A stretch of DNA of 37,638 nucleotides, from the NCBI RefSeq assembly GCF_001194135.2, contig NC_068998.1, forward strand, positions 14,179,594 to 14,217,231, read 5' to 3'. Shown here one piece after another: positions 3,693 through 23,631 of this stretch (its first letter is position 1; every line of letters begins with the position of its first letter). A program made the translations under genes and the position numbers. The DNA comes from Octopus bimaculoides. Lineage: Eukaryota. The notes beneath the pieces are model-generated. The model was not told the DNA's origin and did no database searches. It saw only the letters and a list, made by a program, of their open reading frames with translations.

Positions 3693-3954
3693 ATGATTAG
3701 AGTGAGTCTAGCAGTAAAGCAACGATAAAGGCATGTGGCCAATTTAAAGTAAAAAATATGTTTTTTGTTTGTTTTGGCTGAGAGTCGTAGCTGGTTGTTG
3801 AAGCAAGGTATCATCTGTCAACCAAGGATTCATGGGTTTCCCTAGTAAAATGGTACGCCGTGAAGTCTTTCTAATTTTATCACAAGGCCAGCAATTTGGA
3901 AGGCAGGGCGTTATTCAATTACACCGATTCCAGTAATTGATTATTTTTTTTTTA

Positions 3955-4171
3955 TCATTTCGTTTCTGTCATTTGACTGCGACCATGCTGGAGCACCACC
4001 TTTAGTCGAGCAAATCGACCCCAGGACTTATTCCTTGGAAGCCTAGTACTTATTCTATCGGTTTCTCTTGCCGAACCCGATAAGTTACGGGGACGTAAAC
4101 ACACTAGCATCGGTTGTCAAGCGATGTTGGTGGGTGGGAGGACAAACACAGACACACAAACATATACACAC

Positions 4172-4840: not shown

Positions 4841-5813
4841 GTTCCATTGATCGTCTTACTGTATTCTAAAATATACCTGTAAAGTATTAACCTCCCCAAA
4901 GTAGAGATGCTGTGTACGGACAAATAAATGATAAGTTGAAAGTGCTCTCAAAATGGAATAAAGTATTTGGTTGTGACTAAGAGAAACCTTCTAAGGTTTT
5001 TGATAGAACCCATCCTCAAGGAGAAAAGAGAGAAAGATATAAAACACCAAAACAATATCAACGAACTTAACTTCACCAAATGAATAAGTCAATAAATTAA
5101 GAAAATGAAAGAAAGCAAAGAGGAAACAATTAATCATTTTTGTTCAGCTTTCTTCGACGACGAGTTCCGCCCTAAATGTTAGACCATTAGGCTTCTTATC
5201 CTCAGGGCAAACTAATTAATTCCATTTGCGAATTTTGTGTATTTACCCCATACTAAGCTAAAATGGAATCTGATAAATTCTGCACTGCATGGCTTATATA
5301 ATCGTTGATAGCATGAATTTTCATAAGCGGCTGAAATTCAATTTAAGTTCAAGACCAATGGCTTGCGTATATTCGAGGCACGAAAACACACCCTATTGAT
5401 TTACTATAAATCAATGTTTCATGCAGATACTATGTCTGGTTTCAGTTAAAGGCAATATGCTAACCAATTGTTACTTTCACTCCTTCCCTTTATCCCATCT
5501 CTCTCTCACTCTCTCACTCTTTGTCTCTCAACATACGCACGCAGACATACACATATGCATTTCCGGTTTACCTCAAATTAACGTTCAAGATAACATTTTC
5601 AACAAAGCTGTATTGACGACTTTTATTGTTTTGTACTGCGAAATTAACTAAAAAATTATGTATATATGTGTGCGAGTGTGTAATTGTGCATGCGTGCGTG
5701 TGTGTGTGTGTGAGACCGTTCGCGTACGGTCATTACTCTGTTGAATCGCGTCTCTGCAACCTGAGAAAAAGAAGTAAATATTTGCAGTCAAAATAGGAAA
5801 GACAAAAAAGGTT

Positions 5814-5819
5814 GCTTAC
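5814..5819 (-). other. 5' splice donor ending the OPR TM1-6 exon (phase 1)
   Basis: Minus strand reads GCT CAA A|GTAAGC, a consensus GTAAG donor located between TM6 and TM7, where VP/OT-family receptors have their conserved intron. Confidence 0.85.
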
Positions 5820-6795
5820 TTTGAGCTGAGCTCAACTCTACATCGTAAGTTCGAGCCATGAGAACAGTAAAAAATGGCGTATAGCATATGATAAAACATG
5901 CCACGACAGAAAAAGTCAGTTTGATGGTTTTGATCTTTGATTTGGAAACACCACGACAGATAGCTCGCGGGTTGCGTGATGAATCTTTTTCCCTTGCGTC
6001 CGAGTAATTCTTCACTCGGTTCTCCGACGACGTTTGGGAGGAGATCCGGCATTTGATCGGCTTGCGTACGTATCTTGATGCCGAGCTACCGACTGACTGC
6101 GTGCATTCACGACCGCGCATGCTCTGCCACACAACGAAGCATATTCTACCATAGAAGAAGATCAACAGAAGCAAAGGAACAAAGAAGACGGAACAGAAAG
6201 CCCACCAGCTGTAGGCGATGTTTGCAAGTTCTGTGGTGAGGTTGGGTCGGCATAATTTTCCACCATGGAAATCGACAAGTACTGCATCCAGTTGTGGCAA
6301 TGAACACATCAGGGCCAAAAACAAAGCCAAAGCCGTGGTCATATGAACTCGTCGATTGGTCCACATGTGGGCAGCAAGTGGGTGACATATAGAGATATAA
6401 CGATCCAAGGCGGTGACAATGAGTACGAATGAAGAAGCGTAAAGTTCGGCGACGGTGATAAACTGATACACTCGACAGGCAGATATGTCTCCGAGGAAAT
6501 AGACGTTGATTTTGAGAATAATAGTAGGAAGAATATGGAAGAGAGCTACGGAAATGTCTGTAACGCTCAAATACACGATCAAAAGCTGCATTCGAGTCAG
6601 AGTTGTTTTCTTGATGCGTAGTACGATTAATACGACTGCATTTCCGAACAGAGCCATGAAGCATAGAATACACAGGACCATAATTTCAAATTTACCCAAT
6701 TCGTCATCGTATTGAGGAAATATTGTGACGTTGTTGTAGACACGTGTTGTTGTACTAATCCAAGGACGGAGGTTTTCTTCTGTGAAGTTTTCCAT
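5820..6795 (-). CDS. OPR: Octopressin receptor (vasopressin/oxytocin-family class A GPCR), large coding exon covering N-terminus to ECL3 (TM1-TM6, 325 codons + 1 nt); TM7/C-tail exon not found in the window
   Basis: Six hydrophobic helices with class A motifs: GN in TM1 (LFGNAVV), D2.50 (LSVTD), C3.25, DRY (ALDRYISICHPL), SLPQL in TM4, P5.50 (FFVP), CYTP in TM6, and the KSKIKTIKLT segment typical of VP/OT receptors. N-glycosylation sequons at N3, N22, N185. Kozak-like caaagATGG. The N-terminus MENFTEENL..W..TTTRVYNNVTIFP.YDDELGKFEIMVLCIL matches my recollection of the Octopus octopressin receptor (no database search run). The ORF-track tail SKQPFLSFLF is intronic read-through. Confidence 0.9.
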
Positions 6796-9198: not shown

Positions 9199-9409
9199 AT
9201 TGGTTTCAAATTTTGGCACAAGTCCAGCTAGATCAGGGGAGGGGTTAATTGATTTCCTCGACCCCAGAGTTCAACAGGTACTTATTTTATCGAACCCGGA
9301 AGGGAAGAAAGGCAAAGTTAACCTCAGCAGAATTTGAATTTAGAACGTAAAGACGGAAAATATGCCGTTAAGCATTTTGCTCGGCGTGCTAAAGATTCTA
9401 CCTGTTCGC
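9199..9409 (-). mobile_element. SINE S-B, near full length
   Basis: Homologous to 29495-29693 (tcgacccc, gtacttattttatcga, aaaggcaaagt.aacctc, gaatttgaa, cgtaaagac, taagcattt) and ends in ttgtgccaaaatttgaaaccaat. Confidence 0.85.
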
Positions 9410-12094: not shown

Positions 12095-12178
12095 CCAGGG
12101 GTAGATTTCATCGACTAAAAAGGCGGTGCTCCAGCATGGCCACAGTCAAAATGACTGAAGCAAGTAAAAGAATAAAAG
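12095..12178 (+). mobile_element. SINE S-C 3' tail fragment
   Basis: ggggtagatttcatcgactaaaaaggcggtgctccagcatggccacagtcaaaatgactgaagcaagtaaaagaataaaag is the reverse complement of 3955-4025. Confidence 0.85.
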
Positions 12179-12456
12179 GTGAAGACTGAGAAGGTGAATG
12201 ACAAGGACCTTTTTGTGTGCACAGTCTGTGACAGACCATGTCTGTCCTTGGCTGGCCTCAAATCTCACCTGCGAACCCATGGAAAACAAACCTCACCCAG
12301 CTATTCTGATTATATGTCTGTGCACACGTTTGAATGTGGTGTGTGCCAGAGGGTTTGCAAATCCAATGGGGGTCTTAAAAGACATGTTAGGATCCACAAT
12401 GAGCAGAATTTACTTGCAGGTATTGGTAGTGCAAATCAGAGGTGCAATCTGTGTGG
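12179..12456 (+). mobile_element. C2H2 zinc-finger-coding fragment, most likely the 3' end of an RTE-clade LINE ORF
   Basis: Open for 92 codons up to a gap: CTVCDRPCLSLAGLKSHLRTH, CGVCQRVCKSNGGLKRHVRIH, then CNLC. The C..C.R.C.S..GL..H.R.H pattern and absence of TGEKP linkers favour a LINE C-terminal finger. It begins immediately after a SINE tail, with no ATG or acceptor. Confidence 0.55.
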
Positions 12457-12637
12457 NNNNNNNNNNNNNNNNNNNNNNNNNNNNNNNNNNNNNNNNNNNN
12501 NNNNNNNNNNNNNNNNNNNNNNNNNNNNNNNNNNNNNNNNNNNNNNNNNNNNNNNNNNNNNNNNNNNNNNNNNNNNNNNNNNNNNNNNNNNNNNNNNNNN
12601 NNTATATATATATGTATATATGTATGTACACACACAC

Positions 12638-19366: not shown

Positions 19367-19407
<41 letters not shown>

Positions 19408-19581
19408 TATAAAGCATAAATGATGAGCTTTACACGTTTCTTTATTTGTGCATTTTTGACTTACAGCTGTTTTTGATATGCATTAAAGGTGTGTTTATGG
19501 TTGCGTTTACCCAATCGGTCTAATGATCGATTGAAAAATATTGAACGATTTTAATAAATGCTATCATCATCGGAATATATA

Positions 19582-20399
19582 CAGGGTGTCCCATAAGTAC
19601 CTGATGGGTTTCAATTTTTAATAACCTCCTTAACTTTAGAAATAAATGCATGAAATTTTGATACAATATAAAGGACATAATGGACATTAATATGCATAAT
19701 TCAAATTTTGCAACACCACTACATCCCAAATGAAATATGACATCGCTTAAATGGCAACCATTTTCGGCTTTGCACGGCCGTGCACATTCCAAAACTTTCC
19801 AGGGTCTCCGGTTTGTTGACGTAAACCCTCTATTTCAGGTTTCCCCACAAGAAAAAATACGGGGGTTTTCAAGTCTGGAGAAAGTGAAGGCCATTCAAAG
19901 TAGACCTCACATATGGTTCCAGCAAGATGGGGTAACTGCTCAAACTGCAAGAGAAACAATGCAGTTGTTATGGCAGTGCTTTGGAGAGAGAAAAATATCC
20001 CGAAGCGGCAATGAAAACTGGCCTTTATGTTCCCCAGACTTGACAAGCCCGGATTTTTCTTGTGGAGATAACTGAAAGAGAGGGTTTACGTCAACAAACT
20101 GGAGACTCTGGTGCAACTGAAAGAGAACATCAATTGAGAAACCAGAGAAGTGGGGTCTGAAACTCTTGAGGGTATTATGGTGCAAGTTTTGGAAAGAGCA
20201 CGAGCGCGCGAAACCGAAAATGGCTGCCATTTAAGTGATATCATATTTCATATGTGATGTAGTGGTGTTGCAAAATTTGACTTGTGCATATTAGTGTCCA
20301 TTATGTCCTTTGTAATGTATCAAAATTTCATGCATTTATTTGTAAAGTTAAGGAACTTATCAAAAATTGAAACCCATTAGGTACTTTTGGGACACACTG
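19582..20399 (+). mobile_element. Non-autonomous fold-back Tc1/mariner derivative with very long inverted arms
   Basis: Left end TA|cagggtgtcccataagtacctgatgggtttcaatttt; right end aaaattgaaacccattaggtacttttgggacacactg|CA (TA mutated). Inverted similarity extends about 315 bp (left) versus about 385 bp (right). The plus strand carries a DDD-domain remnant: WFQQDGVTAQTARETMQLL..WPLCSPDLTSPDF / LKERVYVNK..TLVQLKENI..ENGCHLSDIIF. Confidence 0.9.
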
Positions 20400-20478
20400 C
20401 ACATGCACACATGCACGCGCGCACACACACATACGTATGTGTATGAATGTTTCTATGTGCGTATTATATTTGTTCTCT

Positions 20479-23062: not shown

Positions 23063-23631
23063 CAGCGGGTGTTTGGGTTACATTCGATGATATTTTATGA
23101 TTCTTCAAGAATAACTTGATGTTTTAGTGAAATGTCAACAGCGTTATAGAATATGGAGATTAAAGTTGTAGTTGAGAAAACGTTAACTGAAATGGAGGAC
23201 AGGAAGTCAACTGAATATTGTAAAAGAGTTGCCTGTATCAGAGTAATTAGTTTCGGTTGTCGTAGAATTTCTACGGCTTCATTAACCTCAATTTTTGGTT
23301 CCCTAATTACTCCGATTGTAATTCCACGGATTACTATGTGTAGGGCGCGGTCGAGAAATACATCAACCACTCTGCCTGCAACACCAAGACCGAACTCGGG
23401 CAAGATCAAGGAGGTGTTCGGAGATCTTCCTAGAGGCGCAGTGAGGGATGTGTGCACCAGGTACCGGAGCTGTCTCGAGGCCCTGGTGGAATGTGAAGGC
23501 TGCTATTGTCATCTCCCAGCCATAATCTAATTCATATTTGTTGATTTTTCAAAATGCTTTTATTTGTCGATAGGTTATTGTATTTTCTTTTCCTTTCATG
23601 CAAACTATCAAATTTTATCCCGAACATCCTA
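23063..23631 (+). mobile_element. Internally deleted Tc1/mariner (maT/DD37D-like) element
   Basis: Ends TA|cagcgggtgtttgggttacattcgat and atcaaattttatcccgaacatccta|TA are degenerate TIRs. 23293-23509 translates with a stop and a frameshift as FWFPNYSDCNSTDYYV*GAVEKYINHSACNTKTEL / KIKEVFGDLPRGAVRDVCTRYRSCLEALVECEGCY, the WPPxSPDxNPxDY..W motif plus C-terminus. Confidence 0.85.

What the first reader, a model, noticed from the sequence alone, without database searches (positions are those of the whole stretch)
19582..20399. Fold-back transposon built from an inverted duplication of a Tc1/mariner 3' end
Seen: the left arm (19582 to about 19897) is the reverse complement of the right arm (about 20016-20399), including transposase-coding sequence (gtttgttgacgtaaaccctc pairs with gagggtttacgtcaacaaac). 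Only about 120 bp around the QQDG motif is unpaired. The left arm lacks about 69 bp bounded by the microhomology ggtgcaa (20110-20116, 20179-20185). No normal 5' end or HTH region is present. Inference: a two-right-ends element made by template switching during gap repair. If transcribed (e.g. within an OPR 5' intron) it would form a hairpin of about 300 bp, a potential ADAR or siRNA substrate that could target its own transposase family.
Basis: partly seen in the sequence, partly recalled or inferred. Interest (0 to 1): 0.7.

Follow-up and report, generated by a model that had tools for sequence, protein, structure and literature searches.

The report
Fold-back mariner-type transposon remnant, multi-copy
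This 818-base stretch is a dead, non-autonomous Tc1/mariner (DD41D 'rosa/Visitor' type) transposon made of two inverted copies of the element's 3' end. The same rearranged element sits at two or more other loci elsewhere, so it is an old mobile fold-back family of a kind already described, not a fresh local accident.

Summary
Window 19582-19893 is the reverse complement of 20019-20399: 310 aligned positions, 87% identical. It lacks a 71-nt stretch (20113-20183). A 125-nt centre is unpaired.

The right half encodes the decayed C-terminus of a DD41D Tc1/mariner transposase. The left arm carries the same coding sequence in antisense, so it is a true second 3' end and not a natural TIR. Conventional relatives (L019, L009) have 22-36-nt TIRs; L009, L018 and L002 share a separate 5' UTR piece.

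The junction sits on a 5-nt microhomology, GGCCA (19889-19893).

New finding: two further, mutually diverged copies share this exact junction. They come from independently assembled Logan contigs (L005-7 and L016-17), and both occur in run SRR11869384. Both keep the 71 nt. L016's 1.07 kb of flank does not match the window. So the rearrangement happened once, long ago, and the product was then moved as a unit.

The structure and inferred mechanism match the published Goblin/Ozma MITE model: template switching in gap repair, then microhomology joining. The hairpin potential is real (-471 kcal/mol, z = -38). Transcription, ADAR editing and siRNA roles are untested.

Verdict: a real but ordinary feature, a new member of a known kind.

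The parts
19580..19581 (.). TA, left target-site duplication
   Evidence: Read directly from the sequence. Relatives end ...CCCTGTA|flank (L003, L002, L004, L005, L016).
19582..19614 (+). Left terminal inverted repeat, CAGGGTGTCCCATAAGTACCTGATGGGTTTCAA
   Evidence: Pairs with 20367-20399. It resembles the termini of conventional copies L019 and L009 (TACAGGGTGTCCCAAAAGT...) and the published rosa DD41D TIR AAGGGTGTCTCAAAAAGAAC (PMC5490172).
19582..19893 (-). Left arm: an inverted copy of the element's 3' end (TIR, 3' UTR and the last ~80 codons in antisense)
   Evidence: tblastn of P0002 aa 123-155 and 180-203 hits the minus strand at 19899-19727.
19797..19798 (.). Point of the copy-specific 71-nt deletion in the left arm
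   Evidence: Alignment gap. Copies L005 and L016 keep the stretch.
19889..19893 (.). Junction microhomology GGCCA. It is the reverse complement of the Trp-Pro codons TGGCC (20019-20023) and also the start of the + partner (Ala codon GCC at 19890)
   Evidence: The + partner start is confirmed by L019 (GGCGATTCAAGG) and by tblastn starting at P0002 Ala82.
19894..20018 (+). Unpaired centre (loop), holding WFQQDG with the second catalytic Asp codon at 19926-19928
19890..20257 (+). Decayed C-terminal ~120 codons of a DD41D transposase. It has a 1-nt deletion at the third catalytic Asp codon (20052-20054), in-frame stops at about 20067 and 20137, and the natural stop TGA at 20255-20257
20019..20399 (+). 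Right arm, the 3' end in normal orientation
20113..20183 (+). 71-nt stretch missing from the left arm, bounded by GGTGCAA repeats at 20110-20116 and 20179-20185
20258..20399 (+). 3' UTR and right terminal inverted repeat (20367-20399)
20400..20401 (.). CA, a degenerate right target-site duplication (TA with a T-to-C change), abutting a CA-rich microsatellite

Best explanation
Window 19582-19893 plus 19890-20399 is one copy of an old, non-autonomous fold-back element derived from a DD41D (rosa/Visitor-type) Tc1/mariner transposon with a DUF4817-type N-terminus. Its left end is not a 5' end. It is about 387 nt of the 3' end in inverted orientation, joined at the microhomology GGCCA to about 510 nt of the 3' end in normal orientation.

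The most likely origin (inferred) is a single event during repair of an excision gap or break. A nascent strand that had copied one TIR switched onto the complementary TIR at the other end and copied inward. The product was closed by microhomology-mediated joining. This is the model proposed for the Goblin MITE of Aedes aegypti.

The product kept two functional-looking termini, in fact two right ends, and was then mobilised in trans by the family's transposase to several TA sites (shown: three or more loci share the junction). The window copy later lost 71 nt from its left arm and decayed to 87% arm identity.

It encodes nothing functional. If transcribed, it would fold into a dsRNA of about 310 bp (computed), but no transcription or function is shown.
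For: Structure.

DD41D family: there are 41 residues between the Asp of QQDG and the Asp of SPDF, in the window copy and in intact relatives such as P0002. Relatives carry PF16087 DUF4817 and PF13358 DDE_3 and are named Tc3-like transposases. The TIR resembles published rosa TIRs.

The left arm is not a native 5' end: conventional copies L019 (652-1215, 31-nt TIR, TA) and L009 have short TIRs. L009, L018 and L002 share a distinct 5' UTR piece, and in L002 it leads to ATG MEKYSMQQRIQVAK. The relative in L001 has 35-nt TIRs.

Single ancestral event plus mobilisation: L005/6/7 and L016/17 carry the same junction (win GTGAAGGCCATTCAAAGTAGACC; L016 rc GTGAAGGCCATTCAAAGTAGACC; L005 GTGAAAACCATTCAAAATGGATT). 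The two Logan copies are only about 70% identical to each other, yet both occur in run SRR11869384. L016 has a complete arm ending ...TGTA|TA, and its 1.07 kb of flank has no match to the window flank.

Host relatedness: these contigs share interspersed repeats with the window.

The arm identity matrix is star-like, with no left-versus-right clustering, as expected if amplification followed soon after formation.

Published precedent and mechanism: PMC3814204.
Against: No autonomous parent of this clade was recovered, so the parental sequence at both break points is inferred from arms and relatives. Only three fold-back copies were found, and the host genome itself could not be searched. The organism of the Logan runs is unknown. 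The + partner begins within 2 nt of the deletion junction of conventional MITE-like copies (L019) and within 25 nt of four others. The simple 'directly from the autonomous parent' story does not predict this. The right TSD reads CA, not TA. Template switching cannot be told apart from other microhomology-based routes using sequence alone.
Confidence: 0.7

Rival explanations
1. The ancestral fold-back arose from two independent copies that inserted head-to-head close together. A microhomology-mediated deletion then removed both 5' parts, and the composite was mobilised from its two outer 3' ends.
For: It gives the same final architecture. A GGCCA microhomology at the junction fits an MMEJ deletion as well as a template switch. 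The arms show no left/right-specific shared substitutions.
Against: It needs two insertions plus a precise deletion. The published one-step gap-repair model explains the same structure. L002 may show a second, shorter replacement of a 5' end by an inverted 3' end in the same clade. That would point to a recurrent process tied to the ends rather than to chance neighbouring insertions.
Confidence: 0.15
2. The long arms are the natural long terminal inverted repeats of the autonomous parent, as in the LTIR/Lsra DD40-41D clade.
For: A long-TIR clade (about 460 bp) related to rosa DD41D exists in aphids (PMC5490172). The start of L002 matches the reverse complement of the 3' UTR up to about 109 nt from the terminus.
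Against: The left arm contains antisense codons for the transposase C-terminus, including the SPDL..PDFF catalytic region. Conventional family members have 22-36-nt TIRs, and three of them share a different 5' UTR piece. In the aphid LTIR elements the size arithmetic leaves room for the ORF between the TIRs (2307 bp total, 466-bp TIRs, 370 aa).
Confidence: 0.03
3. It is an assembly artefact: a chimeric or folded-back join in a gapped short-read scaffold.
For: The window has ten N gaps and many microsatellites.
Against: There is no gap inside the element. The arms differ at 39 of 310 positions plus a 71-nt indel, whereas an artefact would give identical arms. The same junction occurs in five independently assembled Logan contigs from four runs.
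Confidence: 0.01
4. The copies spread by segmental duplication, or are orthologous loci, rather than by transposition of the fold-back as a unit.
For: The right flanks of the window copy and of L005 are both CA/TA-rich and superficially alike. Only three copies are known.
Against: L016's 1.07 kb flank has no similarity to the window flank, while the element itself is about 81% identical. L005's left flank is also different. Homology stops exactly at the termini, next to TA. Two copies that are about 70% identical coexist in one sequencing run.
Confidence: 0.05
5. The element has been co-opted as a hairpin-RNA locus (an endo-siRNA or ADAR substrate) that acts on its transposase family or on the neighbouring vasopressin/oxytocin-type receptor gene.
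For: It is predicted to form a dsRNA of about 310 bp (-470.9 kcal/mol, z = -37.8). Perfect duplex runs of 26, 25 and 21 bp exist. The receptor exon lies 12.8 kb away.
Against: There is no expression, small-RNA or editing data. No Rfam family matches. The arms are decaying at about the rate of other copies, with transitions roughly equal to transversions and no sign of constraint. The other copies are even more decayed, with L005 arms about 68% identical.
Confidence: 0.05

Closest known systems
Goblin MITE derived from the Tc1/mariner element Ozma in Aedes aegypti (Yang et al. 2013, PMC3814204)
   Same: It is a non-autonomous Tc1/mariner derivative. The sequence next to the left TIR is an inverted copy of the right subterminal region. 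The break points are microhomologous sites in inverted orientation on the parent. It is multi-copy. [quoted passage not shown]
   Different: Goblin is 213 bp with 54-bp TIRs, non-coding, young (98.4% intrafamily identity, 15 copies) and comes from a DD37E element whose parent copy is known. The element here is 818 bp (about 890 before the deletion), has ~387-nt arms that include about 80 antisense codons, and is old (68-87% arm identity). It comes from a DD41D element, and its parent was not recovered. Microhomology is 5 nt (GGCCA) against 6 nt plus a 1-nt insertion.
rosa / Visitor (DD41D) family of Tc1/mariner, e.g. Crmar2 and Apismar4 and their MITEs (PMC5490172)
   Same: The spacing between the second and third catalytic Asp is 41 residues. 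The TIR starts (A/C)AGGGTGTC.CAAAA.. There is a TA target. Internal-deletion MITEs of 350-580 bp are known in the family.
   Different: Published rosa MITEs are simple internal deletions with 28-32-bp TIRs. No two-3'-end fold-back derivative is described in the papers read here. Phylogenetic placement was not tested.
Fold-back-type MITEs with near-palindromic sequence (C. elegans PALTA, CeleTc2 and Cele7; plant Hairpin), as listed in PMC3814204
   Same: The whole element is essentially a hairpin with Tc1/mariner-type termini and a TA target.
   Different: Those are short and non-coding, and their parents are mostly unknown. Here the coding origin of both arms is still legible.
Drosophila Foldback (FB) elements
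   Same: Long inverted arms.
   Different: FB arms are built of tandem subrepeats (from my own knowledge). Tandem Repeats Finder shows none in these arms. The elements are unrelated.

Membership tests
Tc1/mariner, DD41D (rosa/Visitor) family | 41 residues between the second and third catalytic Asp | tested here: met
   There are 41 residues from the D of WFQQDG (19926-19928) to the D of SPDF (20052-20054) on the conceptual reading of the + copy. The spacing is the same in intact relatives such as P0002. The third Asp codon in the window copy carries a 1-nt deletion.
Tc1/mariner, DD41D (rosa/Visitor) family | First catalytic Asp and an N-terminal HTH DNA-binding domain | tested here: not met
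   These are absent from the window (tblastn). They are present in relatives only: DUF4817 in L001 and P0118, and the MEKYS... start in L002. The window copy is therefore a derivative, not an autonomous member.
Tc1/mariner, DD41D (rosa/Visitor) family | TA target-site duplication and short TIRs of the family type | tested here: inconclusive
   The left side has TA and the right side CA. Relatives end at TA. The terminal 20 nt match the published Apismar4.1 TIR at about 16 of 20 positions.
Tc1/mariner, DD41D (rosa/Visitor) family | Phylogenetic placement of the transposase within the DD41D clade | not tested
   No reference DD41D sequences were on hand. Only source names (Tc3-like) and Pfam DDE_3/DUF4817 hits were available.
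Template-switch fold-back MITE (Goblin-like) | Both subterminal regions derive from the same (right) end, in inverted orientation | tested here: met
Template-switch fold-back MITE (Goblin-like) | Junction at short microhomology whose two sites are inverted on the parent | tested here: met
   GGCCA at 19889-19893 equals the reverse complement of TGGCC at 20019-20023 and also the start of the + partner. The parental sequence is inferred from relatives, not from an autonomous copy.
Template-switch fold-back MITE (Goblin-like) | Several copies at different loci that share the junction | tested here: met
   The window, L005-7 and L016-17 share it. Flanks are unrelated, and two copies occur in one run. 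The true copy number is unknown.
Template-switch fold-back MITE (Goblin-like) | Identifiable autonomous parent in the same genome | not testable with these tools
   The host genome is not searchable here. Only fragments of the clade were found (L002).
Natural long-TIR DD40-41D clade (LTIR/Lsra) | Long non-coding TIRs flanking an intact ORF in the autonomous element | tested here: not met
   The arms contain antisense coding sequence. Conventional copies have 22-36-nt TIRs.
Drosophila-type Foldback elements | Arms made of tandem subrepeats | tested here: not met
   No tandem arrays occur in the arms.
hpRNA / endo-siRNA or ADAR-substrate locus | Transcription of the hairpin, plus 21-23-nt small RNAs or clustered A-to-G changes | not testable with these tools
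   Only folding potential could be computed.

The most novel reading that the evidence does not exclude
The fold-back family is transcribed in the host, for example from the upstream region or a 5' intron of the vasopressin/oxytocin-type receptor gene. Its ~310-bp hairpins would then act as endogenous dsRNA: a source of siRNAs that silence the DD41D transposase family, or a hyper-edited ADAR substrate affecting the neighbouring gene. A second possibility is that this family is unusually prone to replacing 5' ends by inverted 3' ends, because two right ends transpose better.
Probability: 0.07. Interest if true: 0.6.

Novelty: new member of a known kind. Interest (0 to 1): 0.3.

Why it matters
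The element is a clear, still-legible example of how a Tc1/mariner element can turn into a long-armed hairpin MITE. Both arms still read as transposase C-terminus, the junction microhomology is visible, and sister copies show that the product was mobile with two right ends. This supports the template-switch model proposed for Goblin, now in a different family (DD41D) and a different animal lineage. It also gives a concrete family in which to test whether two-3'-end elements are good transposition substrates. For annotation, it warns that this stretch is repeat-derived. Any hairpin RNA or editing signal mapped here has at least two paralogous sources elsewhere. It has no demonstrated function for the host.

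Tried and rejected
1. Pfam on the conceptual C-terminal peptides gave no significant family. The family assignment came from homologues instead.

2. A six-frame pseudo-protein joined with XXXXX spacers, meant to fish DNA-level relatives, returned nothing and cost one of the three protein searches. The spacers probably spoiled candidate selection.

3. My first reading of L002 was that the parent has a natural TIR of 110 nt or more. I downgraded it after L019, L009 and L018 showed 22-36-nt TIRs and a shared 5' UTR piece. L002 may be a second, shorter 3'-end replacement.

4. A JGI metagenome scan with the conserved 19-mer AAGAGAAACAATGCAGTTG gave six chance hits only.

P0139 alone found only P0139, P0032, P0101 and one spurious tandem-repeat protein, P0200.

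6. Exact look-ups of window ORFs, to link the window to the Logan runs, found nothing on record.

7. Paper searches for the SRR and SAMN accessions did not identify the organisms.

8. I checked orthology of L005 or L016 with the window locus. It is rejected for L016, which has no flank similarity. It is not supported for L005: the left flank differs, and the right flank is only a CA-rich microsatellite.

9. There is no Rfam family and there are no tandem subrepeats in the region.

10. Other Logan/ENA hits at about 60% identity belong to other DD41D lineages, not to this clade.

Full report
**Setting.** The window is a gapped scaffold of an animal genome. It has ten N runs, GC of about 0.30-0.39 outside the gap-bearing kilobases, and very many (TA)n and (CA)n microsatellites. 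The only clear host exon is ORF 5788-6795 on the minus strand. It is a rhodopsin-type GPCR whose best solved relatives are vasopressin V1a and oxytocin receptors. The organism was not verified. The finding lies 12.8 kb from that ORF's start codon, on its upstream side.

**Checking the observation.** The inverted repeat is real and sits at the stated coordinates.
- Ungapped arms are 19577-19797/20184-20404 (221 nt, 88%), 19799-19856/20054-20111 (58 nt, 90%) and 19854-19893/20019-20058 (40 nt, 78%).
- A gapped alignment joins them into one arm pair, 19582-19893 against 20399-20019. It has 39 mismatches in 310 positions: 19 transitions, 20 transversions, K2P 0.14.
- The left arm lacks 20113-20183, which is 71 nt.
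The left-arm junction reads CTGGAAAG, so a clean repeat slip needs one more small change.
- The quoted 20-mers are at 19811 and 20080.
- The centre, 19894-20018, is unpaired.
- As RNA the element would fold to -470.9 kcal/mol, against -201 +/- 7 for shuffles (z = -37.8), with perfect duplex runs of 26, 25 and 21 bp.

**What the sequence is.**
- On the + strand, from the Ala codon at 19890, the sequence reads AIQSRPHIWFQQDGVTAQTARETMQLLWQCFGERKISRSGNENWPLCSPDLTSPD. After a 1-nt deletion it continues FFLWR*LKERVYVNKLETLVQLKENIN*ETREVGSETLEGIMVQVLERARARETENGCHLSDIIFHM*, with the stop at 20255-20257.
- tblastn with an intact relative (P0002) aligns aa 82-203 to 19890-20254 on the + strand. It aligns aa 123-155 and 180-203 to 19899-19727 on the minus strand. 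The missing 24 residues correspond to the 71-nt deletion.
- No N-terminal or helix-turn-helix part exists anywhere in the window.
- Homologues are fragments named Tc3-like transposases from arthropods and from metagenomes. Where Pfam domains are recorded, they are PF13358 DDE_3 and PF16087 DUF4817.
- Counting from the Asp of QQDG to the Asp of SPDF gives 41 residues, in the window copy and in intact relatives. This is the DD41D signature of the rosa/Visitor family.
- The terminus CAGGGTGTCCCAAAAGTACC resembles the published rosa TIR AAGGGTGTCTCAAAAAGAAC (PMC5490172).

**Is the left arm a natural TIR?** No.
- DNA-level relatives were recovered through read-through ORFs. In the ENA metagenome REYS20-1, L019 is a conventional 565-bp MITE-like copy (652-1215) with 31-nt TIRs and TA flanks. 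L009 starts TA-CAGGGTGTCCCAAAAGTCAC. L009 and L018 share a 5' UTR piece...AATTATTTAACCTTTT.
- In L002 (CHAS20-1, the sequence closest to the window's right arm at 86%), that same piece leads 62 nt later to ATG GAA AAA TAC AGC ATG CAG CAA CGT, which is MEKYSMQQRIQVAK, the start of a DUF4817-type transposase.
- A more distant relative in L001 has 35-nt TIRs.
- So normal members have short TIRs and a distinct 5' end. The window's left arm, which carries antisense codons through the SPDL..PDFF catalytic region, is a second 3' end.
- The aphid LTIR clade with ~460-bp TIRs is not a model for this. By size arithmetic its ORF fits between the TIRs: 2307 bp in total, 466-bp TIRs and a 370-aa transposase.

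**The junction.** The left arm ends ...GTGAAGGCCA. This is the reverse complement of the Trp-Pro codons at 20019-20023. In other copies the site is the palindrome TGGCCA. The + partner begins GCCATTCAAAGTAGACC. The two overlap in GGCCA (19889-19893), a 5-nt microhomology whose two parental sites are in inverted orientation.

**It is not a one-off.** This result changes the interpretation.
- Protein P0139 (Logan runs SRR11869385, SRR11869384 and SRR11869394; identical contigs L005-L007) turned out to be a read-through ORF across the same fold-back. It has the left arm in antisense and the same junction (GTGAAAACCATTCAAAATGGATT against the window's GTGAAGGCCATTCAAAGTAGACC), followed by the loop, right arm and terminus ...CCTGTA.
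- This copy keeps the 71 nt that the window's left arm lacks. It has lost the outer ~60 nt of its own left arm.
- Protein P0154 (runs SRR11869391 and SRR11869384; contigs L016 and L017) is a third copy. The contig starts in the loop, crosses the identical junction (reverse complement GTGAAGGCCATTCAAAGTAGACC), and runs through a complete arm that includes the 71 nt, to ...TTTGTA|TATGG. A further 1.07 kb of flank has no similarity to the window.
- Copies two and three are only about 70% identical to each other, yet both are present in run SRR11869384, so they are paralogues.
- These contigs share other interspersed repeats with the window: L005 1-60 with 12122-12178 and 3945-4000, and L016 1457-1520 with 9239-9301. 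They therefore come from the same or a related host.
- It follows that the rearrangement occurred once, in an ancestor element. The fold-back was then moved as a unit to several sites. The 71-nt deletion is a later event private to the window copy.
- An assembly artefact is excluded by the arm divergence and by five independent assemblies of the junction.
- The identity matrix of arms is star-like: winL-winR 86%, winR-L016 81%, winL-L016 82%, and L005 68-76% to everything. Left arms do not cluster against right arms. This fits amplification soon after formation and independent decay since.

**Mechanism.** What is shown:
- two inverted 3' ends;
- a 5-nt inverted microhomology at the junction;
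- termini that stop at TA (the window's right side reads CA);
- three or more loci.

What is inferred: the product arose during repair synthesis. A nascent strand that had copied one TIR re-annealed to the complementary TIR at the other end and copied about 387 nt inward. It was then joined at GGCCA to a strand carrying the last ~510 nt. This is the model drawn for Goblin. Goblin is a 213-bp MITE of Aedes aegypti whose internal sequence is the right subterminal region of its DD37E parent Ozma in reversed orientation, with a 6-bp inverted microhomology (PMC3814204). A single switch at the palindromic GGCC during leftward synthesis would give the same product.

The main rival for the ancestral event is two head-to-head insertions trimmed by a microhomology-mediated deletion. 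Sequence alone cannot separate the two. I give the repair-synthesis route the higher weight because it is one step and has a precedent. L002 may also record a second, shorter replacement of a 5' end by an inverted 3' end in the same clade. Its contig starts with 28 nt that match the reverse complement of the 3' UTR about 81-109 nt from the terminus (25/28 against the window's left arm). It then switches at A(A/C)ATTAAT into the 5' UTR.

**An unexplained point.** The 5' limit of the + partner is nearly the same in independent kinds of copy:
- 19889 in the fold-backs;
- 19887-19889 in the conventional MITE L019 (GGCGATTCAAGG);
- 19900-19902 in L009 and L018, which look like L019 with a further 15-nt loss;
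- 19907 in L008;
- 19913 in L004.

Only L003 (19980) and L002 (20030) break elsewhere. Either the fold-back was built from, or shares an ancestor with, an already miniaturised element. Or the GGCC/TGGCCA motif just upstream of the WFQQDG codons is a preferred stop or switch point. I could not decide between these.

**Function.** Nothing suggests a present function. Both coding remnants are broken by frameshifts and stops, and the arms decay with transitions roughly equal to transversions. Sister copies are more decayed still. No Rfam family matches. The hairpin potential is large, so if the region is transcribed it would be a plausible Dicer or ADAR substrate. Transcription, intron location and editing cannot be tested here.

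**Verdict.** What needs correcting is the scale. This is one decayed member of an old, mobilised fold-back family derived from a DD41D rosa/Visitor-type element. It is a new member of a kind already described for Tc1/mariner MITEs.

**Limits of this work.** The host genome could not be searched, so the copy number is a lower bound of three. No autonomous parent of the clade was recovered. The organisms behind the Logan and ENA samples remain unidentified.

Noticed in passing
window 5788-6795 (-): A 335-aa open reading frame encodes a rhodopsin-type GPCR (7tm_1, E = 8e-31). Its best solved relatives are vasopressin V1a and oxytocin receptors. The fold-back lies 12.8 kb on its upstream side.
   Followed up: partly
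window 12179-12454 (+): An ORF with C2H2 zinc fingers runs into the N gap at 12457-12602. It could be a host ZNF gene fragment or transposon-borne; this was not resolved.
   Followed up: partly
window 12122-12178, 3945-4000 and 9239-9301: Short interspersed repeats are shared with the flanks of the Logan contigs: L005 1-60 at 82% and 78%, and L016 1457-1520 at 81%. This links those runs to the same or a related host genome.
   Followed up: partly
L019 652-740, L009 1-75, L018 1-60, L008 1-60, L004 340-380, against window 19887-19913: The 5' break points of independent 3'-end fragments of this family cluster within about 25 nt, just upstream of the WFQQDG codons. L019's deletion junction is within 2 nt of the fold-back junction. 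This is unexplained.
   Followed up: partly
L002 1-110: The contig begins with 28 nt matching the reverse complement of the family's 3' UTR (about 81-109 nt from the terminus). It then switches at an ATTAAT microhomology into the 5' UTR and the transposase start codon. This may be a second, shorter replacement of a 5' end by an inverted 3' end, or a long-TIR subfamily. The contig is too short to tell.
   Followed up: partly
L001 3587-4632 and 4861-5327: A 1.15-Mb ENA contig carries a 1046-bp internally deleted DD41D element with 35-nt TIRs and a DUF4817 N-terminus. Just downstream is a separate 193-nt inverted repeat (89%) with an 81-nt spacer, which is another hairpin-type repeat.
   Followed up: no
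window 23095-23530, both strands: Two long overlapping ORFs on opposite strands (120 and 125 aa) have no Pfam family.
   Followed up: partly
window 19368-19401 and 20400-20447: CA-rich microsatellites lie about 180 nt left of the element and directly against its right end. The right one may have obscured the TA duplication, which now reads CA.
   Followed up: partly
P0114 (ENA contig, not fetched): In another DD41D lineage, an ORF joins the N-terminal MEKYS...HTH directly to the ...IISRNGDVDWPPR C-terminal part. This suggests that internal-deletion derivatives may be common across the family.
   Followed up: no
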